Below are positions 6,606 to 63,127 of a stretch of DNA of 64,000 nucleotides, piece by piece; within the stretch, counting starts at the first letter, position 1; each line of letters begins with the position of its first letter. The stretch is from assembly GCA_023334545.1 (NCBI GenBank), contig JAADVB010000084.1, forward strand, positions 1 through 64,000. Reading direction: 5' to 3'. The notes under the pieces were generated by a model. The model saw nothing but the letters and a program-made list of their open reading frames with translations. It searched no databases and was not told the origin of the DNA. The DNA is from Salisapilia sapeloensis CBS 127946 (Eukaryota > Protista > Oomycota). A program made the translations under genes and the position numbers.

Positions 6606-7733
6606 ATGGAGATCAGTCGACGCCCGCAGACACCGCAGGGACGGCCGCGTATGCCGCCGCCACCGTCGCCTTCGATCAAATCTACAACGGTGTCTGCATC
6701 ACCGGCAGTCCGGCAGAATGAAGCACAACGACCAAAGGTCCAGCCACCGAAACAGACCCAAGCGTCGCAAGGACAGACGCAGACGGACGAAGTCTTGCTC
6801 GAGCATACGTGGGGCGTGCATTTCGTTTCACAGCTTTATCGTTTCCATCGAGAACAGCTAGGTAATTACGCCCACGACCTTGTCAAGTTCCTGCGTGCGG
6901 CTGCAGTCCAAGCGACTCGTGGACAAGAGTACGGGTACTCTGTCAGCGTCCGGACGACCAACCAGTTTATCGTCTTTCAAATCCAAGAAGACCGTCGAGG
7001 CGACGGCACGAAGACCAAATCCGGCTTTGTATTGCACCAGCAAGCTATCGATGGCGCCTCGTCCTCTCAACTCCAGCGACGCAGCTCTGCCTCTTCCATG
7101 TCCTCTTCTAGCAATGGCACACAGAATGCTCGTAAGCGATCTGCCTCTCGTCAGCGAGAACATCAGTACGTAGTGCTTTTGCGTGGTTCGAACCAGGTCT
7201 TGGCCTGGACTTGTTCATGGCTCCAGCAGCGTTTCCAATGTATCGTCGGTCGGACGCCTGCACGCTTTGGCAAGCAGCATGTCCGGAAGCTCGCGGCAGA
7301 ATGCATCATCGACGTTGTTTCGGCACAAGCCAAGTCAAAGAAACCGAACGACGTGGACATTGACGACAAAGGCGTCAAGGCCCCTTTATTACTTAAATTC
7401 AGAAATAACGCTGCAAGCGCTACCTTGCGAACGTATACGCTGACCGTGCCGTGGAATACAGTCATCCGTCTGTACAAGAAGCAACTCAAGTCATCGAAAC
7501 TCCTAGCGCCAGACATTGTAACGCATATTGAATCCGAGTACTTCCCGTCGCTCCCGATGGACCTGTCCCAATTCCATCTTTCCAGCTTTGAATTGCAGGA
7601 AGTTGCAGCCGATGACATTGGCCACTTGGAGCTATACAAGATGCAGATCGTACCACATATGCTAAATCACTTGACAAGTATCGGAAGTCTCTTGCAGCAA
7701 GACCAAGTCGCCAAGCCACAACTTACGCTGTAG
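6606..7733 (+). CDS. CENP-L/Fta1-like inner kinetochore protein (tentative)
   Basis: Single 375-aa ORF. HTWGVHFVSQLYRF, LLRGSNQVLAWTCSWLQQRFQCIV, YTLTVPWNTVIRLY and MDLSQFHLSSF recall, in order, blocks of CENP-L as remembered from the human protein. Recognised by eye, no HMM. Confidence 0.55.
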   Translation: MEISRRPQTPQGRPRMPPPPSPSIKSTTVSASPAVRQNEAQRPKVQPPKQTQASQGQTQTDEVLLEHTWGVHFVSQLYRFHREQLGNYAHDLVKFLRAAAVQATRGQEYGYSVSVRTTNQFIVFQIQEDRRGDGTKTKSGFVLHQQAIDGASSSQLQRRSSASSMSSSSNGTQNARKRSASRQREHQYVVLLRGSNQVLAWTCSWLQQRFQCIVGRTPARFGKQHVRKLAAECIIDVVSAQAKSKKPNDVDIDDKGVKAPLLLKFRNNAASATLRTYTLTVPWNTVIRLYKKQLKSSKLLAPDIVTHIESEYFPSLPMDLSQFHLSSFELQEVAADDIGHLELYKMQIVPHMLNHLTSIGSLLQQDQVAKPQLTL

Positions 7734-52491: not shown

Positions 52492-52785
52492 CTACTGCGG
52501 CGTCTGGCCTGCCGCGCCAGTCTGCTCCTGCTGCTGCATGATCTCCGCGTAGCTCTCCTGCAGCCGGACGGACGTACGCATCGTGTGGCGCAAAAGTTTC
52601 TCGGCGCAACTGTTCATGCACGAAAGCTCCTTGTCGTCCAGCTTCTTGCTCCGGAACGAATGGACGCAGTCGTTGAAGCAAAGCTCCACCGTGCGGCTAA
52701 AGTACGCGATCGTCTGCGTCACGCGCATCTCCTCGATGTGCTCCTCCATCTTCCGCTGGAACTCGCGCTCTTGTTGGTTGCTCAT
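52492..52785 (-). CDS. TIM9: Small Tim chaperone, TIM9-like
   Basis: Twin CX3C: VELCFNDCVHSFRSKKLDDKELSCMNSCAEK. Confidence 0.88.
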   Translation of the reverse strand: MSNQQEREFQRKMEEHIEEMRVTQTIAYFSRTVELCFNDCVHSFRSKKLDDKELSCMNSCAEKLLRHTMRTSVRLQESYAEIMQQQEQTGAAGQTPQ

Positions 52786-53413: not shown

Positions 53414-54323
53414 ATGAGGCAGAATACATGGGGAGCGTGGCTCGACCGGCTCGAGAGCGCTCGATCGCAGGAGAATAACATTTCCAGTCAATTACGCAAT
53501 GGGAATGCAGACAACGTCGGTGCGAGCGTGTTCTCGCTGCAGCAAACTGTGTCGCGATTGAAACGCGATTTCAGTCAGCTCGAGCGATCAAGCTCGGATG
53601 ATGTGTACAATTCCTATTGTCTTCAAGTGCATTGACTTTGGCTGACAGTATTTTGACAGGACGGAAGATGAAATGCAGCGTCGAAAGCAAGTGCTCAAGC
53701 AGCTAGATGAAAGCACAGTAGGACTCTTTGCCATTTCACGTCTAGACTACGGAAGATAGCACGTACTTACCACTCTATCCAGCAAGCAGACGTGAGTGCC
53801 TATGACCGGCGAAAGTCTAACGGAGCAAGGTGCTGCTCATATCAATTTGCTTCTGATGAGGACCATCTAACATACGCGGTAGAGGACAGAATGGCAACGA
53901 CTACCACCGCAACCTCCTCGGCATGCAAAACCAAATTATGAAAGGTATGTCTACAATATGCAAATGGCCTATTGCACTACATCTGACTCGTGTCCTCTAG
54001 ATCAGGACGACCAGCTAGATCTCATCAGCAGGGGTGTCTCCAACCTCCGCAACTACAGCAACGCAGTCAGGGACGAGTCAGATCTGCACACGCGACTGCT
54101 GTCGGATGTCGGCAATGATGTGGAGAAAGCAACGGGCGGTCTCGAAAGCGAAGGAGCGCGCGCTGACTACGTGCGTTCATTTCTTTTTATAATGGCTCGT
54201 CTTGTAGTCTTATTAATGTATCCAACGTAGGTGGCGCGTCAAAGCAGCAACTTTAAGCTGTACATCATCATTATCATCCTCATCGCCATCCTCATCCTGC
54301 TGCTCATGCTCGGCAGCGGATAA
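53414..54323 (+). CDS. Qc-SNARE, syntaxin-8/SYP5-like (multi-exon)
   Basis: TEDEMQRRKQVL, QNQIMK|DQDDQLDLISRGVSNLRNYSNAVRDESDLHTRLLSDV, and TM anchor LYIIIIILIAILILLLML. Confidence 0.85.
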
Positions 54324-54609
54324 GGCGATTGCTTTCTTTCAAAAGGTCCTGGTGGGACTGGCCGATGAACCGCCACTAGGTACGCAAATAGGTGGACATT
54401 GAATTCCTTCAAGACCAAATCAAAAAATATCCGTCGTCATTTTTGTTTATTCCGTCTTATCACTCTTCTTATACCTTTGGACTGTTCTCTGTCGTGGAGT
54501 CCGTCTCGGCTGCTTCTTCTGCAGATCGTTCTTCATTATAAACCGGAGCACATCGTAAATCACTCGCACCTATGTTCATTTTAACACTTGTAAAATGTAC
54601 AGAGCGATA

Positions 54610-55058
54610 CTAGTCTTGGAAAGCAAGTACATTGTTGAGGAAAACGATGCTGGACAACCCAATCTGCACACATGGAAGCAGTGGAAGCGTAGGAGCGTCG
54701 TACAGTTTCTTTGCCGGTAGAAAGATGTCACCGTAGAGCGTCAGCAAGGAGAGGAACATGCCAAAACGCACAAACTACGCATACGCACGCACATTGTCGA
54801 TAAAATCCATATGCACATGACTAAGCATATCAATCTACTTACAAGGCTTGGATTGCGAAAGTAAGCTGCTGTGGATGCGAGAGACGCTGTCATACGAATC
54901 CAGCCAGCTTTGGTGCCGCTCGCGATGTAGCAGCCGATGAGGACAACTAGCAGCACAGCCTGAGCGTACATGAGTCGGTCGGTCCTCACGCTACGTCCAC
55001 TCTTTTGGGCAGGACCCCAGAGAGCTTGGTGCACGCTTTCGTGCTTCAAGATGACCAT
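54610..55058 (-). CDS. Hypothetical small multi-pass membrane protein (2 exons, ~127 aa)
   Basis: Exon 1 ends RNPSL|gtaagt; after the intron ...gcgtag| the frame continues FVRFGMFLSLLTLYGDIFLPAKKLYD..IGLSSIVFLNNVLAFQD*. Confidence 0.7.
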
Positions 55059-57599
55059 TTTTGACTTGCCGCCCTTTTATCAGTGTGAATGAGCTGATTG
55101 AGGATGAAGAGACGTAATCCAATTAATACTTGATACAGCGGTAACTGAGATTTTGATCCTAAGAAGAGGAACAACGCTATGTATATGAATACTGGTCTAC
55201 TAGAAACTTTTATTCAAGTTGTGATACTTTTGAATGACGGACCGATGCTACGAACTACATGCATTGCAGCTCAAATACTGTTCTAGTGACCGTAGCCATC
55301 AAGATTCAGCATTTAAAACTACGCAGCCGACAGAGTTGCTCTTTATGACGGGCGCTTACAATAAAAGCCAACAGCTGACAATGAGCTGGATATAAGTATC
55401 TGTTTGAAATGTCCTACACTACAGTGGTGCCTCCCCTGACATCATTTGGGTTATAACCTCTGGCTCGATCCTACTAGCTAGTCCAGACGCACCGATCAGC
55501 AAAACAACACTGCATAATTGTGATTGATACAACTCGTGCACCCATATCTTTCAGTGTTGCTGTCAAAGAGATGGGGCAGGACACATTTGGTTGACCCAGC
55601 GAAACAGGACGAACTTATGGGTTACAGCTATGCATCAAAAGATTTTACAATGAAGTTATTCACCCAGTAAGCCCCCAGTCGAGATCATTGTGGGCTGCAG
55701 CATTAAACTGAATCATCTACAGGTAAACAAAAACGAAAATAAACACGGTAGTAATTAAGCATACCGTAGATGTAAAAACTGCTATCTAGACGTCAGAAAG
55801 CACTTCAATTGCTACGAACTGCTTATAGAGCAAGAAGAAAGATCACGATGTACCACCTACACTAAGCAGAGGGTAAACGACATGAGTTGAAAAGAACGAG
55901 CTCATTGCCGCAATTTGAGAACTGCAAAAAGATCAGAGGTTTTTACGAAGAATCTCACAAATTTGGCTACTACCGTAATGTAAGTTTTGTTATTCCATGT
56001 TGCCTACAACTACTGCGCTAGACACTGGTCATACGCTTCCTGATGTAGCTACAAAATTAAGCAGAATTTCACGGACATAATCTGGTTTTAAAAAGATGAT
56101 GAGCATATAATTGCTTTAGCGTACTCTGTTATCGTTGATTTCCATGGATGCTCTGGCGCTGGATTATGTGGAACGGATACAGTTGCCACATTAGTTGTGT
56201 GTTTTGTAACAAGCCATCTATAGCAAAGCATTGCTTCATACTTTCGTCCACGACTGATCATTTGGAAACTCAGCCGGTATCTACCACCAACCTACACAAG
56301 TAATGCAAATGTTGTAGCAGAAAAAGAGGATACATTTATTTGTTTCTCGAGCTGGAGCTCCAGTAATTAGTCACACATGTGCAAATAGTGGACGCCATAC
56401 CCGTCTACGCCGGTGCTTGATTAATATGTACTGGAACAAGCATTAGATTTCATACGTGACTTTACGCCTTTTCACCTCACTTTCAATTGGAGAACATATC
56501 AAGCTACGACAAATCTTATCAACATACCGTTATTGCTTCTATCCGAGCTTAGAATCAAGTAGATTTCCCTATCACTGAACCCGCATATTTTAAGACACTG
56601 GCAGCTACACCAAGTTATAATTTTATACGCATACCTCTAGAGCAAAATGAAATAATGCAATGTATAGCCTCGAGCTCGTGTCGCCTGACAAGTTGAAGCG
56701 AATACGCTTACTGTTTAGTATGAGTTTCCTTACGCGTAATGTTGATCGAAAGAAGACATACACCTTTCATACACATATACTACTGCAGATAAGTTAAGAT
56801 AAAAATACAAACGCTTTCTAGCAATCAGAGAAGCAGTCATGAATAACAGGGATGCAGTTGCTCTTTTAATCTTTTACCGACACGTTATGTCTTTCCCATC
56901 TAAAAGGTCTTACATGCAGGCAGTCAATGACCTAAAACATACAGTATTGAAACAAGCTGCGGACCATCTCGGTAAACATTTTGTATATGATTCTGCTATT
57001 AAGAGATCTTCTCACGGGTAAACAAGTATCATCTTTACTGATTTAAAGCGTTTATCGATTACATGCAGAGGCGGAACTCGCAGCAATGTATCAAATAGGT
57101 TTTCATTTCCAAACCTTCTTCGAACTCAAGTCGTCAAAGTATCGCCTTCAAAGGTCAGACCTTCAGCCTTTCAAGAAAAAAGCCCCCACCTGAGGCTCTA
57201 GAAGAAGGATAATTATGGCGGAGATGGGCTCCGCACCGCCTAGAGTGATGGTTACGCGGGAAGTTTGACATTATACGCGGTGGAAAAGACGACCCGATTA
57301 TCACGCGAGCTACTTACATACAAGAGCACCAATAGGGCACATTAGCCAACACACTTAATAAGTATTACACATGACCAAACAGCTCTGTCCAAGTTCACAC
57401 AAGAGCAGCATATGAGGAAATAAGACAGCAAGCTTAAACGAAAAAATCACAGCCTGGCCCAAAATGTTGTTTATAATTTGCAAAAGCTCTGGATGGACAT
57501 TATATTTCAGAAGGGACTTCGCATCCATGTGCCTCAGTACCACAAATAGACTTAAATGTTCTCCCTGCATTGACGCAATTCAATTCGACGCTTTAATTC

Positions 57600-60240
57600 A
57601 TAAACTTCCAAAAACTAACAAACAACAAATAATGATTAATACCAAAAAAAAGATGTAAACTATACGCAACAACTTTATAAAAAACAACAAATAGAACACA
57701 ACAAAGCTTAGTTATACAATATATTGTTTAAAAGCATACGCAAATATTTTTGATTACACAGTACATATGTCGTTCTCAAAGATCTAAATCTTAGATTCAT
57801 TTGTTTTCGTTAACTAAAAAAAAACACACACACAATCCTATTTTAACACACACGACAAAAATTTTGCACAAACTAAATGCAATCATATAAATGCTTATAT
57901 ACATGCAAAGGTCTATACCAATAAATGACACAAAGTTATAATCGATCTAACAATGAACAAATCTCGTTTATATAAACAACAAATATGTAACAAATGCAAT
58001 AGTTTCAATTAAAAAAAAAATCTATTTACTTATACGAATTAATAAACAATTGATTAACATTAGTTTCAACGTTTGCGAATTAAACGGAAACTTTTTAGCT
58101 CAGTGTTTACACTCAAAATAACAGTTAAAACGGTAGTAAATTCTAAACAAGCTTGTACATTAAAAATAATTCAAATTTGACAATTTTCTATTTACACATC
58201 GACATTAATCACAAAAACAATTATATGTTAAGCAGAACACCTAGAAATATAGGACATCTTCATATTGTCAAAATATTTTTCTTTAGTATATTTCTTTTAT
58301 TTTAATACCATTGTATACAAATTTATCGCTATAAGTAAACATATATAATACAAAAAGTTCATTAAAATAGGTTTAATGTTGTACTGTTCATACGCATAAA
58401 GAAAGACAAATTTGTAGCTCAATAAAAATTAGCTCCTTTAAACTATCAACATTTCATAAGCAAAACATTTATTATATATATTTACAAAATTTACATGTTT
58501 ATTTTCAAAATCTTTTGCACAGCGTAAGGCGTTTCTTAAAATTTGAATCTATGATATAATAACTTTTTTAAAGTATGATTTATACGTTGAGAACTAATCA
58601 AAATTTTGTTAAATACAAAGAGTTCTGCAAAAAATGTAAAAAACTTTTAAAAAAATAATTTTTTCTAACTAACATAAGATAATTACGCATTTGCCTACTA
58701 GAAAGCTTTATTGAGGTTGTACAAAAAAAAATAACTAACAAAATTTAGTGTTTAAATTTCAGTATTAAGACTTATAAAATGTTTTGCTTATTAAAGGTAT
58801 ATTCAAAAGCTTGTTTTGTTGTATTGTAAAAATGTAAAGTTCACTTCTAATTTATATTTTTATCAAATTGACTAATTAGTATCTTTTTATGTTTTTTAGC
58901 ATACAACTTTCATAATATAAAAAAGTTAAATTGTATTATTTATTCAACAGAGGATATAATTTAATATGCAATCCACGTTCATAAAAAAGGTGTTAAATTC
59001 AAATGATAATATTCAATTATTTTTGTAAATTGTTGGCATACGTAAAGCATCTAGTATTATATCTATACGTCATGTAATGGTTTAATTTTATTTTATTTTT
59101 TGTGCGAAAACAAATTGTTATAATTATTTAAGTTTGTCATATTAATTTTTTGTGTTTTTTATTATTCATATTTTGAATAAATACCAAATCTTCTAATGAT
59201 AGAAAGATTATTAATTGATAATACTTTGTTTCTTTACTGTTTCTGTATAACAAAGTTTTGAATTTAATGTTTTGCTAATTCGTAGACTAAGCATAAGTAT
59301 TAAATTCTGTACTTATAGCCGCTTATAAGAAAATGAAATTTAATAATACAATCTTAATTACGCAGTTTGTTATAGCTGCAATATTAAAGAATATAAATTT
59401 TTTACTTGTAAACAATGATGTTTAGCAAAACTAAGAATATATCAATATTTTAATCACCTTTTTTTCTAAAACACTACTTAACTCTGTTTTAAGATTCTGT
59501 TAAGTAATTAGTTCTTATTTAAAAAAAAGAATTTGTCTGATTACTTCCATTACGAAAGTTTTGTTTGTAATTAAAACATGGGACTTATACTTTTGAGTAG
59601 CTTTCTATAATAATTTTATGGACATGTTTTTACACTATCTTGTATAAGACTTTTGTTTTAATATTTTTTAATAATTATAACAGTTTGTTGTACACGTTTT
59701 TGTATTACTTTTAGAATTTAATGAATTCTTTATTATAATGTATTTTTGTATGACTAAAAATATCTTGTTTATTTTATGCTTATAATTGTAGTCTAACCAA
59801 AGACATTTATGCACTCAGTGTTGTAGAGTTCAAAATTCGTTTACTTTTGCTCTTATTAATGTAATAACGAATACAATAAGTAGGTGTTTTGACATTCGGT
59901 CTTTGTTTGTGTTAAATATGTGGAGTTCAAGGTTTTTGGATCTTATTATTTGTACAAAGCACATCATTGTTTTTGTTTAAAGTTTTGTTATACATTTTAT
60001 ATTTTGCAGACTAACAAAAGTTTCTTCAGTCGCTTTTTTGCATTAACATGGTTACGCAATCTGTTTTTTATATCAAAATTGGTTTTATTTTAGAGTTTTG
60101 TACAAAGTTTTGCAGTCTTAAGTAATGTTTCTTCGTTGGATATAAAACAATCTGATGAATGTTAAAACGTGTTTTTGCGTTTTTATAAAAGTACAAAACA
60201 GAAGTTGATGTTGCTTATTGTCGCTTTAAATGTATCACAT
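57600..60240. other. AT-rich non-coding island with strand-skew inversion (candidate centromere core / replication origin)
   Basis: Hand count ~614 G+C in 2640 nt (~23% GC). C>G and A>T on the left; G>C and T>A on the right. No ORF of 60 aa or more between 57658 and 60215. The composition is certain; the function is inferred. Confidence 0.6.
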
Positions 60241-61744
60241 GCGAACTGTTATGAAACCGGTTGGTGACATAGCTGTTTATTTGGCGTAAATAAATGTTAT
60301 GCGGGGCGTTGAATATGATGCTATACATGAGTCTAAACAACTTGTTAGGATCCGGCAAGGTATGATCAAAAGCGATAAACACTACTAGAAAATTGTTTTG
60401 ACTGCCCATAAAGGCTCCTTTTAGGTTTCGTACTTCGTAAGTTAGCTGATAGAGCGCACAGAATTGCCTACATGATCCATAGAATGACGTACTTGTGTCT
60501 CCGATCTATTTCATCACATTCGACAGACGTTACGCAAGGAATCGAATTCTGCCGTGGTCGACATCGCTCGGTTTAAGTTTATACGTCAGATAGTTCTATC
60601 CTAACTTTCTGCTTTCTCTAGTGTAACTTGAGTGGACTTCACCAATTATAACTCAGGGCAGTCGATGAGTAAAATGGGTTCTCATTTTCTTATGAGGATA
60701 CACGCAAGAGATATGGACATGTCCTTCGTCCAGCTCTTTCGGCTCCGAAATGATGATTGCCATGCGACGGACTCAGGCTCTTCTACCTATCACTTTCACT
60801 ATCTCAAACGGATCCAAAAGATCCTGCTTGGCGCGACTGACGGCTTGATTCTTTCAAAGTTGAATAGGCCTAATACTCGAAATGTACTTTCATGATACTA
60901 ACCATGATCTCTCCATGATCTTCATGCGACAAAGTTGTCTATGAGCTCTACGAGCGAAAATCTAAATTTGAGTATTCATTGTTTTTGTGGTGAGTTGTAT
61001 AGATGCTTAGTAGTTTGTTATCAATAAACGAGCTGACTGCTAAAGCGAAAAAAACATGGCGCCAGGACCAGAACATTTTACTCTTTTGTTTTGACTGTAC
61101 TTCTGACAAACGAAGTCGTTTTTAGTTTGGCAAGGAAGCAGTAGAAGTACTATGATCTCCGTATGTTGAGTTGAAACTTTCATATATTCAAGAGTCTGCA
61201 TTGAAAAATGTCATACAGCAACATATATCTCGTATCTATCGAATCAGTTTTTTGGTTAGGACGAAGGGACACAGTCTCAGGATGCTCACAAACTCTGTGT
61301 CGGGTGACGCGTACGCCAGCTTTTGACCGGTCGTGAAGCAATTTGTATTCGTGGGATATTTGCTACAATGATTTAATAGATGACCCTATCGTGGTTTCAA
61401 GGCAATTCTATCGCTTCTAGGTACATTTACAGACATTCTAACAGCTAAGAGCTAAGAACTGAAGGAGTGCTTTCATCACACTCTTACCTACACAGTTGAA
61501 GTGTCGCTAACTGTTTGCACTTTTACGATGGTCGTTGATCTGAAGACTCATCGATACCGATATGCAGAAGGTTTCACCGGTGAGGAGATCGTTCTCACGC
61601 AGACGACAGCTAAGCAGAAACGTGTATATCAATCGAAGAGTTAACTAAATTACTACAATCCAACGGTGATAAGACGTGTATTCGTTTTAACGTTCCAAAA
61701 CCAAAAGACTATTGCATTGATACTCTGCTAGTAAATCTAGAAAC

Positions 61745-63127
61745 CTACTGACTGTCGACGGATTCGGACAAATCGGTGCTGACTAAAAGTCTCTCGCTCG
61801 TGCATCGTATATCTCCTGCTGGTCTCCATCGATCGATGAGATGATACGGCGCGTACACTTTCACGTACTTGTTGGGACCCAAGTCGAGGGAGTTGAAGAC
61901 GTCGGATGAGAAAACGGCCACAATACGTGTATGTAGAAGACCAGACTCATCCTGTGGTTCTATCGACTCGACGTACGCATCGTAGATGACCTGCCCTTGT
62001 CCAGCCTGCATGGATCGAGCCTTGCTATCGAGCCACAGGACCACGTGCTGTCTCTGCTGAATCAAATCTGTCGTCTGGCTCTGTCGCTGCCACAGACTCT
62101 GTCCGTTCGAGTGCAGAAGCGTCCGATCTTGTTGGATCTTATGCGTCGCTTTCTCCAACAGCCTCCCAATCTTCCCTGGGACGACTCGAGGTCTCGACGG
62201 ACCAACAGATCGTCGTTGTAGACCATTGGACGGCAACGGCGAGGAAAAGGATGTATTAAGCGCTTCGGAGCGCATGACTTGAGGCGTGTCTTCGATCCGG
62301 TCCGATCGATCGACAGCAGGATGTGGACTCATGTCGATGTTATTATTCTGGGAGTTACGTATGGCTTGATTCAGTCTGTCTGAAAGTCGAATCTTTGGCT
62401 GGGAACTGGTCTCAGTAGGTAGAATACTGCGTGGTCTCGTTCCGGCAGCATGGCGTCTACATAAATACTGTCAATAACCATGGACTCTACTGTGCCATAC
62501 AAGATTGACTTTGTGGACGCCTGGCGAGCACGCTTCTGACGCTGGAGACTTGTCTCTGCTTGCCTTTTGGCTCGGAAGGACGTCGTGGGGCGAGACCACC
62601 GGGCCGGTCGAGCGTCTGCTCGCTCGACTTTACACTCCAGAGGCTCTGGCTGATGGATAGACGACTCACGACGCGGAGGCTCGTTCAGTGGCGTTTCATC
62701 CGGCATCTGAGCAATAGGAGACTGCGACCACCCGAGAGACTCTGCTGCTCTCGGCGTAATCTCTCCTCCGAGACTCTGACTCGCGTTCTCGAGCGAATCT
62801 GGCTGCGGCACGACTTGATCCTCTTGAGGTGGAGGCGTCATGGGTCTCAGTAGCGATGCGAATGGGTTTACCTGGACATCTCGACTCTCTTCGCATTTCG
62901 AATGAGCTTATATTCAACGTATGTAGAGAGATGGAGAGCGTACCGACTTCGAGGCTGAAGGCTGCTTGCTCTCGAGGTCGTTCTCGGACGACAGTGGTGC
63001 TGTAGCTGTGCTCAGAGGATTGACTTTCGCCTATGATGGACTCATCTAGCTGTGTGGAGGGTTGGAAGATGTGTCGGCCTCGGGCGTCGGCGTCCAAGTC
63101 GTAGTAGACTCTCCGCTCGCCTTCCAT
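61745..63127 (-). CDS. Hypothetical multi-exon protein; C-terminal part weakly resembles SPIDR/DUF4502
   Basis: Three tandem minus-strand ORFs (62696-63127, 62371-62841, 61745-62332) with gene-like composition, including VAVFSSDVFNSLDLGPNKYVKVYAPY. Whether they form one gene, and the family, are uncertain. Confidence 0.55.

What the first reader, a model, noticed from the sequence alone, without database searches (positions are those of the whole stretch)
57600..60240. 2.6-kb AT-rich island with mirror-image strand skews: candidate small regional centromere or fixed replication origin in an oomycete-like genome
Seen: GC falls from about 50% in genes to ~23%. Hand counts on the + strand: 57601-58500 C=138, G=77 (skew about -0.28); 58501-59640 C=117, G=129 (about +0.05); 59641-60240 C=62, G=91 (about +0.19). 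A/T flips too (line 57601 A=36, T=11; line 59941 A=16, T=32): ACAA/AAAC words on the left, TTGT/GTTT on the right. I found no true long inverted repeat, so the symmetry is compositional. Known: G>C and T>A to the right of a point, and the reverse to the left, is the mutational footprint of a stable bidirectional origin and is reported at Candida albicans centromeres. Diatom (Phaeodactylum) centromeres are short AT-rich islands, whereas the Phytophthora sojae centromeres described are hundreds of kb and Copia-rich. Inference: this could be a compact, transposon-free centromere/origin type not described for oomycetes.
Basis: partly seen in the sequence, partly recalled or inferred. Interest (0 to 1): 0.85.

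Follow-up and report, generated by a model that had tools for sequence, protein, structure and literature searches.

The report
Short AT-rich centromere-like island, oomycete
This 2.7-kb gene-free, very AT-rich stretch is one of a discrete set of near-identical-sized, sequence-unique islands in a compact oomycete genome, all with the same mirror-image strand bias, and it is most likely a small diatom- or yeast-style centromere, a kind not yet described for oomycetes.

Summary
Window 57560-60243 is 2.68 kb at 23.6% GC in a ~50% GC genome. The strand skew inverts at ~58.74 kb, which is also the GC minimum (A+C-rich left, G+T-rich right; permutation z=6.8; the largest flip in the 64-kb window).

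It is not a one-off. I verified seven distinct islands on seven contigs of this 22.4-Mb assembly. All are 2.5-3.1 kb, 23-27% GC and gene-free, with no homology to each other, and all have the same skew polarity. They form a discrete class: 43-55 low-GC 100-bp windows per 3 kb, against 6 or fewer in control loci. I estimate roughly 15-25 islands genome-wide, about one per Mb.

No RNA genes, ORFs, repeats, mtDNA homology or shared ancestry (also none in a purine/pyrimidine alphabet) were found. The assembly holds only three Copia-type RT hits, so nothing like the long Copia-rich centromeres of Phytophthora is visible.

Best reading (about 0.55): short regional AT-rich centromeres of the diatom, Plasmodium or Malassezia kind, with a Candida-like skew inversion.

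Not shown: CENP-A binding, and one island per chromosome, because the assembly is too fragmented. Other agents of this scan already reached a similar reading on other islands of this genome.

The parts
57560..60243 (.). AT-rich core island (2684 bp, GC 0.236), unique, no ORF, no RNA gene, no repeats
57560..58743 (+). Left arm: + strand is A>T and C>G (A-tracts, ACAA/AAAC words), so the outward-reading (-) strand is T/G-rich
58744..60243 (+). Right arm: + strand is T>A and G>C (T-tracts, TTGT/GTTT words). The skew inversion point at ~58.74 kb coincides with the GC minimum (58.65-58.95 kb, GC 0.20)
54231..57559 (.). Left shoulder: gene-free, GC graded 0.46 down to 0.37, with a weak skew of the same sign as the left arm
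60244..61744 (.). Right shoulder: gene-free, GC 0.30 rising to 0.43, with a weak skew of the same sign as the right arm
53414..54230 (+). Left flanking gene, read by eye as syntaxin-8-like t-SNARE (two exons at least; no Pfam hit for the pieces), transcribed towards the island
   Evidence: translation read by eye; Pfam negative
52492..52785 (-). TIM9 (Tim10/DDP zinc finger), 90% identical to the Nothophytophthora orthologue
61745..63127 (-). Right flanking ORFs of unknown family (called SPIDR-like by other readers; not tested here), transcribed towards the island

Best explanation
The island is the centromere of its chromosome. It would be a short regional centromere defined mainly by a ~2.7-kb core of unique, very AT-rich DNA inside a ~7.4-kb gene-free zone, like those of diatoms, Plasmodium, Cyanidioschyzon and Malassezia. 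Inferred mechanism: the AT-rich core favours deposition of CENP-A nucleosomes in place of H3 and nucleates one kinetochore; a CCAN component, CENP-L, is encoded in this same window. The mirrored bias puts T-tracts and G on whichever strand reads 5'->3' away from the midpoint. It is either the mutational footprint of forks that always leave from the core (cytosine loss and T gain on the lagging-strand template, as proposed for Candida centromeres that replicate first in S phase) or a selected structural polarity of the core. Shown here: the composition, uniqueness, discreteness, sparseness, uniform size and shared polarity of the island family, and the absence of Copia-type repeat clusters in the assembly. 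Inferred, not shown: CENP-A or kinetochore binding, one island per chromosome, and origin activity.
For: (1) The islands are a discrete class. Seven verified distinct islands lie on seven contigs: C1189 2684 bp, C1122 2641, C269 2579, C519 2472 plus a split-off piece, C590 3059, C678 2621, C631 at least 2480. GC is 0.23-0.27. Each has 43-55 of a possible 59 100-bp windows at or below 32% GC per 3 kb, against 6 or fewer in 17 other nuclear loci that hold no island. The diatom criterion is 10 or more (10.1101/096016).
(2) The size matches known CENP-A domains: 2.4-5.6 kb in Phaeodactylum, 2-4 kb in Plasmodium, 2-3 kb in C. merolae, and 3-5 kb with a 78% AT core in Malassezia.
(3) The islands are sparse. 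The genome holds only 110 A/T-only runs of 22 or more. 7 of 22 independent run places checked were islands. The extrapolated total is ~15-25 in 22.4 Mb, within reach of oomycete chromosome numbers (12-18).
(4) All 7 islands have the same skew polarity. On the outward-reading strand, pooled, T/A = 7641/6365 and G/C = 2422/2108; TTTT outnumbers AAAA 742 to 422 in 7 of 7 islands. This is the polarity reported for Candida-clade centromeres. Ordinary gene 3' flanks show no such bias.
(5) The islands share no sequence with one another, either in ACGT or in the R/Y alphabet. There is no ORF, Pfam, Rfam or tRNA hit and no mtDNA match.
(6) Each island sits in a 6-7-kb gene-poor zone of a compact genome. 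One island carries a MULE insertion. Two copies of one island differ by 4%.
(7) There are only 3 RVT_2 hits in the whole assembly, so no Phytophthora-type Copia-rich centromere candidate is visible.
Against: There is no chromatin, Hi-C or replication data for this organism and no RNA run. The assembly has 1365 contigs (longest seen ~0.2 Mb), and no (TTTAGGG)x4 array is assembled, so 'one per chromosome' is untested and the island total is only an extrapolation. Some unverified run clusters may be mtDNA contigs. Long repeat-rich centromeres could simply be missing from a short-read assembly. All oomycete centromeres characterised so far are long and rich in Copia-like elements. Gene order around the island is not conserved with Pythium, Nothophytophthora or Albugo, so positional homology with known centromeres could not be used. 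The origin reading of centromeric skews is disputed.
Confidence: 0.55

Rival explanations
1. The island is a fixed, highly efficient bidirectional replication origin, or another AT-rich chromatin landmark such as a matrix-attachment or nucleosome-free domain, and is not the centromere. The mirrored skew would be the footprint of forks that always leave from the same point.
For: The skew polarity (G and T enriched on the strand reading away from the midpoint) is what fixed origins leave in bacteria and at human origins. The flip point coincides with the GC minimum. The polarity is shared by 7 of 7 islands.
Against: About one island per Mb is far too sparse for the origin set of a 22-Mb genome, so these would have to be a special subclass. 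In yeasts the genome-wide replication skew enriches A and C on the leading strand, and the Candida centromere skews were argued not to be replication-linked. The uniform 2.5-3.1-kb size and the 7-kb gene-free setting are not needed for an origin.
Confidence: 0.15
2. The island is the decayed relic of inserted foreign or mobile DNA (a transposon, a virus or mitochondrial DNA), driven AT-rich by a cytosine-deaminating or RIP-like process, with no present function.
For: CC and TC dinucleotides are depleted in the islands (odds 0.68 and 0.73, against 0.74 and 1.27 in the background), as other readers of this scan noted. The GC of the islands (~0.23) equals that of the mtDNA contig C952. Island sizes are uniform, as copies of one element would be. 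A MULE element and a Fanzor fragment lie near two islands.
Against: The islands share no k-mers above shuffled expectation, even in the purine/pyrimidine alphabet that transitions preserve. There is no match to the rest of the assembly, mtDNA contig included, at E<=10. There are no ORF remnants and no Pfam hits. The YC depletion is strand-symmetric and does not carry the skew. Random insertions would not all show the same mirror polarity.
Confidence: 0.1
3. The island is an unusually long, AT-rich but otherwise ordinary intergenic spacer between convergent genes. Its skew would come from transcription running in from both sides, or from terminator or polyadenylation composition.
For: Here both flanking genes point towards the island, as do the clear neighbours at C590, C269 and C1122. 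Transcription-coupled skews exist in fungi (PMC3315797, listed).
Against: 400-bp stretches downstream of 53 ordinary long ORFs in this genome show no such bias (amino-minus-keto -0.016, GC 0.47). At C631 the nearest clear gene points away from the island. Low-GC content is bimodal, not the tail of a continuum. There is no RNA data to support read-through.
Confidence: 0.1

Closest known systems
Diatom (Phaeodactylum tricornutum) centromeres, Diner et al. 2017 (preprint 10.1101/096016)
   Same: Both are stramenopiles with a ~48-50% GC compact genome. The diatom CENP-A peak is 2.4-5.6 kb over a unique low-GC core with no shared motif or repeats. The low-GC criterion (10 or more 100-bp windows at or below 32% GC per 3 kb) is met about five-fold here.
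   Different: CENP-A binding and episome maintenance are shown in the diatom and untested here. No strand-skew inversion is mentioned in the diatom preprint (0 occurrences of 'skew'). These islands are more uniform in size and lower in GC (23-27%) over their whole length.
Candida albicans / C. dubliniensis / Lodderomyces centromeres with skew inversion and earliest replication (Koren et al. 2010, PMC2924309)
   Same: A unique 3-5-kb core in a long gene-free interval. GC skew goes from negative to positive and AT skew from positive to negative at the core. No homology between the centromeres of one genome.
   Different: The skewed regions in Candida have raised GC content with only a local dip, whereas these islands are deep AT troughs. 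Here the T/A component dominates over G/C, which is more like Yarrowia lipolytica, where only an AT skew was seen. Origin and ORC data exist for Candida and not here.
Malassezia, Plasmodium falciparum and Cyanidioschyzon merolae short AT-rich centromeres (PMC7025860; cited in 10.1101/096016 and PMC7082073)
   Same: One GC trough per chromosome in a small genome. AT content is ~78% in Malassezia, similar to here. The kinetochore domain is 2-5 kb, non-repetitive, and flanked directly by genes.
   Different: The Malassezia core is under 1 kb and enriched in a 12-bp motif; no shared motif was found here. Plasmodium sits in an already AT-rich genome. Binding data exist for those organisms and not here.
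[quoted passage not shown]
   Same: Same class of organisms, and presumably the same CENP-A-based kinetochore (a CENP-L gene is in this window).
   Different: Those centromeres are 211-356 kb (my recollection of PMC7082073; the passages read here say only 'long' and 'much larger'), heterochromatic, and packed with Copia-like transposons. This island is 2.7 kb and transposon-free, and the whole assembly has only three Copia-type RT matches.

Membership tests
Short regional AT-rich centromere (diatom type) | Low-GC core: 10 or more 100-bp windows at or below 32% GC within 3 kb, in a genome of ~48% GC | tested here: met
   48 such windows at 57001-60000. The other six islands have 43-55. The 17 other nuclear loci that hold no island have 6 or fewer; criterion.
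Short regional AT-rich centromere (diatom type) | Unique sequence: no satellite, no shared motif, no homology between the centromeres of one genome | tested here: met
   No tandem, direct or inverted repeats. Single copy in the assembly. K-mer sharing between the 7 islands equals shuffled expectation.
Short regional AT-rich centromere (diatom type) | Exactly one per chromosome | tested here: inconclusive
   The 7 verified islands lie on 7 different contigs, with none doubled on a fetched stretch, and the estimate is ~15-25 per 22.4 Mb. But there are 1365 contigs and no assembled telomere arrays, so chromosomes cannot be counted.
Short regional AT-rich centromere (diatom type) | CENP-A/CenH3 (or kinetochore protein) occupancy with H3 depletion | not testable with these tools
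   No chromatin data. The only public run holding the stretch is a DNA run, probably the assembly's source.
Short regional AT-rich centromere (diatom type) | Confers stable episome maintenance or mitotic stability | not testable with these tools
   Needs an experiment.
Candida-type centromere with constitutive early origin | GC skew negative-to-positive and AT skew positive-to-negative inversion centred on the core | tested here: met
   z=6.8 here, and the same polarity in 7 of 7 islands; polarity described.
Candida-type centromere with constitutive early origin | Skewed region has raised GC content | tested here: not met
   The skewed region here is the GC minimum of the window, 0.20-0.27.
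Candida-type centromere with constitutive early origin | ORC binding and earliest replication in S phase | not testable with these tools
   No replication data.
Oomycete Copia-like-transposon (CoLT) centromere | Cluster of Copia-like retrotransposons tens to hundreds of kb long | tested here: not met
   No transposon in 54.2-61.7 kb. The assembly has only 3 RVT_2 matches (C881, C672, C685), none on an island contig. Caveat: repeats may be under-assembled.
Fission-yeast-type A+T-rich island replication origins | Hundreds of 0.5-1-kb islands, about one per tens of kb (from my own knowledge of Segurado et al. 2003, not re-read) | tested here: not met
   About one island per Mb, each 2.5-3.1 kb.
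RIP-like or deaminase-mutated repeat relic | Copies keep similarity at transversion level (purine/pyrimidine alphabet) | tested here: not met
   R/Y k-mer sharing (k = 20, 24, 28) is at shuffled levels, apart from one ~21-nt chance-sized match.
Nuclear insertion of mitochondrial DNA | Homology to the organism's mtDNA | tested here: not met
   The assembly contains mtDNA (C952 encodes nad11, nad1 and nad4L). The island finds only itself in the assembly at E<=10. Only part of the mtDNA was seen directly.

The most novel reading that the evidence does not exclude
In this early-branching, compact oomycete lineage the centromeres are composition-defined ~2.7-kb AT cores that also act as the fixed, first-firing bidirectional origins of each chromosome. 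The outward-pointing T-tract polarity shared by all of them would be a functional part of the element (for example, orienting ORC/MCM or CENP-A loading) rather than a passive mutational scar. Such a core could then maintain episomes and serve as the basis of an oomycete artificial chromosome. It would also mean that the long Copia-rich centromeres of Phytophthora are a derived state.
Probability: 0.2. Interest if true: 0.8.

Novelty: new variant of a known kind. Interest (0 to 1): 0.62.

Why it matters
Oomycete centromeres are so far known only as long, heterochromatic clusters of Copia-like transposons. If short AT-rich cores exist in a divergent compact oomycete, centromere architecture switched within the class. 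The diatom-like simple type might then be ancestral for stramenopiles, and there would be a tractable 3-kb element for building stable episomes in oomycetes, which currently lack them. The shared mirror-image T-tract/G polarity, seen in every island, is the same signature that marks Candida-clade centromeres. Its recurrence in a stramenopile would make the disputed link between centromere identity and a fixed replication origin testable in a second, unrelated lineage.

Tried and rejected
(1) Island census. A/T-only-run patterns searched over the whole assembly worked. Some may be mtDNA. C448 was a false positive.

(2) Relaxed DNA self-search, meant to pull out other AT-rich DNA by chance matches: nothing but the island itself.

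(3) Chromosome count from telomeres: no (TTTAGGG)x4 array in the assembly. The repeat may differ or be unassembled.

(4) Positional homology with known oomycete centromeres. Neighbours of the VPS52 orthologue in Pythium oligandrum and of TIM9 in Nothophytophthora and Albugo share no gene order with this window. The approach was abandoned; this is uninformative rather than negative.

(5) Reads. Only one DNA run (contigs) holds the stretch, two other organisms of the same study hold none of it, and there is no RNA run. So there is no local depth, no expression data and no long-read spanning test.

(6) Common origin of the islands, tested by k-mers in ACGT and R/Y alphabets: rejected.

(7) Coding remnants. 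Open frames in this island are shorter than in shuffles. The two longest frames in the other islands (127 aa in C590 and 111 aa in C269) and a 143-aa frame at the edge of the C269 island have no Pfam hit.

(8) RNA genes and tRNAs: none.

(9) YC-context cytosine loss as the carrier of the skew: rejected. TC/GA is 0.93 and CC/GG 0.87, against AA/TT 0.71 and CA/TG 0.73.

(10) Flanking long inverted repeats, as another agent reported for a different island: none within 44-64 kb.

Full report
OBSERVATION

Exact counts reproduce every hand count: 57601-58500 C=138/G=77, 58501-59640 C=117/G=129, 59641-60240 C=62/G=91, line 57601 A=36/T=11 and line 59941 A=16/T=32. The GC of 57601-60240 is 0.233, while the gene-rich 54 kb to the left runs at about 0.50. 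With a 400-bp window and a 30% threshold the island is 57560-60243, which is 2684 bp at GC 0.236.

It sits in a gene-free stretch from about 54.2 to 61.7 kb. The shoulders of that stretch grade from 0.46 down to 0.37 on the left and from 0.30 up to 0.43 on the right.

I measured the skew inversion as the keto (G+T) minus amino (A+C) content of the right half minus that of the left half. The value is +0.26, or z=+6.8 against 2000 permutations. The G/C part alone gives z=3.8 and the T/A part z=5.4. It is the largest value of any 2.7-kb window in the 64 kb, where the background has sd 0.052 and a maximum of 0.168. The cumulative skew turns at about 58743, inside the GC minimum at 58650-58950.

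There are no tandem, direct or long inverted repeats in or around the island.

IS IT REAL DNA, AND WHOSE?

The window is the first 64 kb of a 67,357-bp contig (C1189) of a 22.4-Mb, 1365-contig assembly. The island is single-copy there, even at E<=10.

The one public run that holds it yields a separately built 35-kb contig that crosses the island and both flanks without a difference. That run is probably the source of the assembly, so it excludes an assembler artefact but is not independent biological support. No RNA run exists.

The organism is an oomycete, but a divergent one. Its VPS52 is 54-56% identical to Phytophthora, Pythium and Globisporangium, 47-48% to Saprolegnia and Aphanomyces, and 45-46% to Albugo. 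Its TIM9 is 90% identical to Nothophytophthora.

THE ISLAND IS ONE OF A FAMILY

I used A/T-only runs as a probe, because they are very rare in this genome. There are 6 runs of 35 or more, 11 of 30 or more, 64 of 24 or more, 110 of 22 or more, and 206 of 20 or more in 22.4 Mb.

With the window's own island, seven of the 22 independent places (two of the fetched pieces merely duplicate others) are islands of the same kind:
- C1189: 2684 bp
- C1122: 2641 bp
- C269: 2579 bp
- C519: 2472 bp
- C590: 3059 bp
- C678: 2621 bp
- C631: at least 2480 bp, at a contig end

All have GC 0.23-0.27.

An eighth piece, contig C159, is a 96%-identical reverse-complement copy of part of the C631 island, probably the other haplotype. 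The only other wholly AT-rich piece, C952, is mitochondrial DNA encoding nad11, nad1 and nad4L.

The class is discrete. By the criterion used for diatom centromeres (100-bp windows at or below 32% GC within 3 kb), the islands score 43-55 of a possible 59. The 17 other nuclear loci that hold no island score 6 or less.

Clusters of runs on contigs I could not fetch are further candidates: C863, C878, C1089, C1167, C1213 and C1289, plus C1, C3, C358 and C423 from the partial list. One such cluster, C448, proved not to be an island, and some may be mtDNA. I extrapolated from the verification rates (4 of 5 clusters, 3 of 18 single runs) and from the share of islands expected to lack a long run. This gives roughly 15-25 islands, about one per Mb. 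That figure is an estimate, not a count.

SHARED PROPERTIES

The islands have no sequence in common. Shared k-mers equal the expectation from first-order shuffles (k=14: 25 against 20±7). This also holds in the purine/pyrimidine alphabet, which would survive transition hypermutation.

None has an Rfam or tRNA hit. The open frames in this island are shorter than in shuffles. The two longest frames in the other islands, and a third at the edge of the C269 island, have no Pfam match.

Each island lies in a gene-poor zone of several kb. The neighbours are ordinary genes: an IQ/LRR protein, OMP decarboxylase and a trypsin-like protease elsewhere, and a syntaxin-8-like gene and TIM9 here. The C519 island is split by a 2.7-kb segment carrying a MULE transposase and a zinc-knuckle ORF.

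All seven islands have the same skew polarity. The strand that reads 5'->3' away from the midpoint is T- and G-rich. Pooled counts are T 7641 against A 6365 and G 2422 against C 2108. On the outward strand T exceeds A in all seven islands, and G exceeds C in all seven (by a single base, 287 against 286, in C631). Permutation z-values are 3.1-6.8 in six islands; the weak one is the transposon-split C519.

This polarity does not change on reverse-complementing, so it is a real two-state property, and 7 of 7 agree. It extends at lower amplitude into the shoulders.

It is carried by T-tracts and TG/GT words. TTTT outnumbers AAAA 742 to 422, with TGTT, TTTG and TTGT likewise, in 6-7 of 7 islands. 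It is not carried by cytosines in a pyrimidine context: TC/GA is 0.93 and CC/GG 0.87. The depletion of CC and TC that other readers of this scan noticed is real (odds 0.68 and 0.73; TC is 1.27 in the background). However, it is strand-symmetric and separate from the skew.

Ordinary 3' flanks of 53 long ORFs in this genome show no comparable bias. One island (C631) has its nearest clear gene pointing away. Convergent transcription is therefore not a sufficient explanation.

WHAT IT MOST LIKELY IS

These features together are the known signature of short regional centromeres in small genomes: a sparse, discrete set of unique, gene-free, uniformly 2.5-3-kb AT troughs in a compact ~50% GC genome. 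Comparators:
- Phaeodactylum: one CENP-A peak of 2.4-5.6 kb over a low-GC core per chromosome, with no motif.
- Plasmodium and Cyanidioschyzon: 2-4-kb low-GC cores.
- Malassezia: a 78% AT core inside a 3-5-kb kinetochore domain at the chromosomal GC minimum.

The skew inversion with exactly this polarity is the common feature of Candida albicans, C. dubliniensis and Lodderomyces centromeres. In Yarrowia only the A/T part is present.

The assembly shows only three Copia-type reverse-transcriptase matches, none near an island. Nothing resembling the long Copia-rich centromeres of Phytophthora, Globisporangium, Pythium or Peronospora is visible.

A CENP-L homologue in this very window (6606-7733, Pfam E=3e-11) shows that the organism has a conventional inner kinetochore. 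I put this reading at about 0.55.

HOW IT WOULD WORK

The steps below are inferred, not shown. The AT core would favour CENP-A over H3 nucleosomes and seed one kinetochore. The mirrored bias would arise because forks always start in the core. To the right of such an origin the + strand is the lagging-strand template, which loses C and gains T; to the left the same happens to the - strand. That is the observed polarity.

A caveat from the literature applies. In yeasts the genome-wide replication skew enriches A and C on the leading strand, and the Candida centromeric skews have been argued not to be replication-linked. The polarity may therefore be a centromere-specific or selected feature rather than an origin scar.

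RIVALS

A special fixed origin or other chromatin landmark without kinetochore function (0.15) fits the polarity. It does not fit the one-per-Mb density, nor the uniform size and gene-free setting.

A decayed insertion (0.10) fits the YC depletion, the mtDNA-like GC and the uniform size. It fails on the absence of any residual similarity, ORF remnant or mtDNA match, and on the constant polarity.

An ordinary convergent intergenic spacer (0.10) fails on the bimodality and on the lack of such bias downstream of ordinary genes.

The remaining probability is for something not considered.

WHAT COULD NOT BE DONE

'One per chromosome' is untestable on this assembly, and a telomere-array count found nothing. 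Gene order around VPS52 and TIM9 is not shared with Pythium oligandrum, Nothophytophthora or Albugo, so I could not ask whether the island sits where relatives have their centromeres. There is no expression, chromatin or replication data.

RELATION TO EARLIER NOTES OF THIS SCAN

Other agents had already followed up other islands of this genome and called them likely small centromeres (s1-307691, s1-307696). One island was reported between long inverted repeats (s1-288927); this one has none. My contribution is fourfold: the exact check of the skew claim; the demonstration that the same polarity holds in all seven verified islands and is carried by T-tracts rather than by the YC depletion; the discreteness test; and the rough census.

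VERDICT

I class it as a new variant of a known kind: a short AT-rich regional centromere with a Candida-like skew, in a class of organisms where only long transposon-rich centromeres are described.

Noticed in passing
window 6606-7733 (+): A 375-aa ORF matches Pfam CENP-L (PF13092, E=3.2e-11, 43.5 bits, above the 24.4-bit cut-off). So this oomycete encodes an inner-kinetochore (CCAN) subunit. It lies 50 kb from the island, so the linkage is probably coincidental.
   Followed up: partly
L008 (G000:C159, whole 1459-bp contig) vs L022 691-2142 (G000:C631): C159 is a reverse-complement copy of part of the C631 island at 96.0% identity (48 mismatches and 4 gap openings in 1461 columns). It is probably the second haplotype assembled apart, which would mean ~4% allelic divergence inside an island.
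   Followed up: partly
L016 1-6047 (G000:C519:400-6446): The C519 island looks split. An A-rich 25% GC piece of at least 850 bp is followed by ~2.7 kb at 40-49% GC carrying a MULE transposase domain (PF10551) and a zinc-knuckle ORF, and then by the 2.5-kb AT core. Contig C100 is an 89%-identical copy of that MULE segment. This looks like a transposon insertion into an island.
   Followed up: partly
L005 (G000:C952, 5291 bp): A wholly AT-rich contig (GC 0.15-0.32) encodes nad11 (NuoG-like, 663 aa), nad1 and nad4L, so it is mitochondrial DNA. Its GC matches that of the nuclear islands, but the island finds no match to it.
   Followed up: yes
G000:C881:3818-4543, C672:4023-4751, C685:7559-8275: These are the only three Copia-type reverse-transcriptase (RVT_2) matches in the 22.4-Mb assembly. 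One lies in an intact 1726-aa open frame and two are broken by stops. The genome appears very poor in such elements, or they are under-assembled.
   Followed up: no
whole assembly G000: No run of four TTTAGGG units was found anywhere. Either telomeres are not assembled or this lineage uses another repeat.
   Followed up: no
L028, L029, L030 vs window 41-55 kb: TIM9 lies near RICTOR and ribosomal protein L4 both in Nothophytophthora and in Albugo candida. In this genome it lies between an INTS3/VPS52 block and a syntaxin-8-like gene instead. Local gene order here is rearranged relative to a linkage conserved across two oomycete orders.
   Followed up: partly
seven islands pooled (window 57560-60243 and L004, L009, L016, L021, L022, L025): Strand-averaged dinucleotide odds in the islands: GC 1.54, CA 1.24 and AC 1.20 are enriched; CC 0.68 and TC 0.73 are depleted; CG 1.00 is not depleted. 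The excess of GpC is unexplained.
   Followed up: no
L006 497-2066 (G000:C1189:64497-66066, - strand): Two ankyrin-repeat ORFs (the 245-aa one confirmed by Pfam, the 173-aa one read by eye) lie between the right-hand flanking gene and the contig end. Another agent reported a broken Fanzor1 gene start at that end.
   Followed up: no
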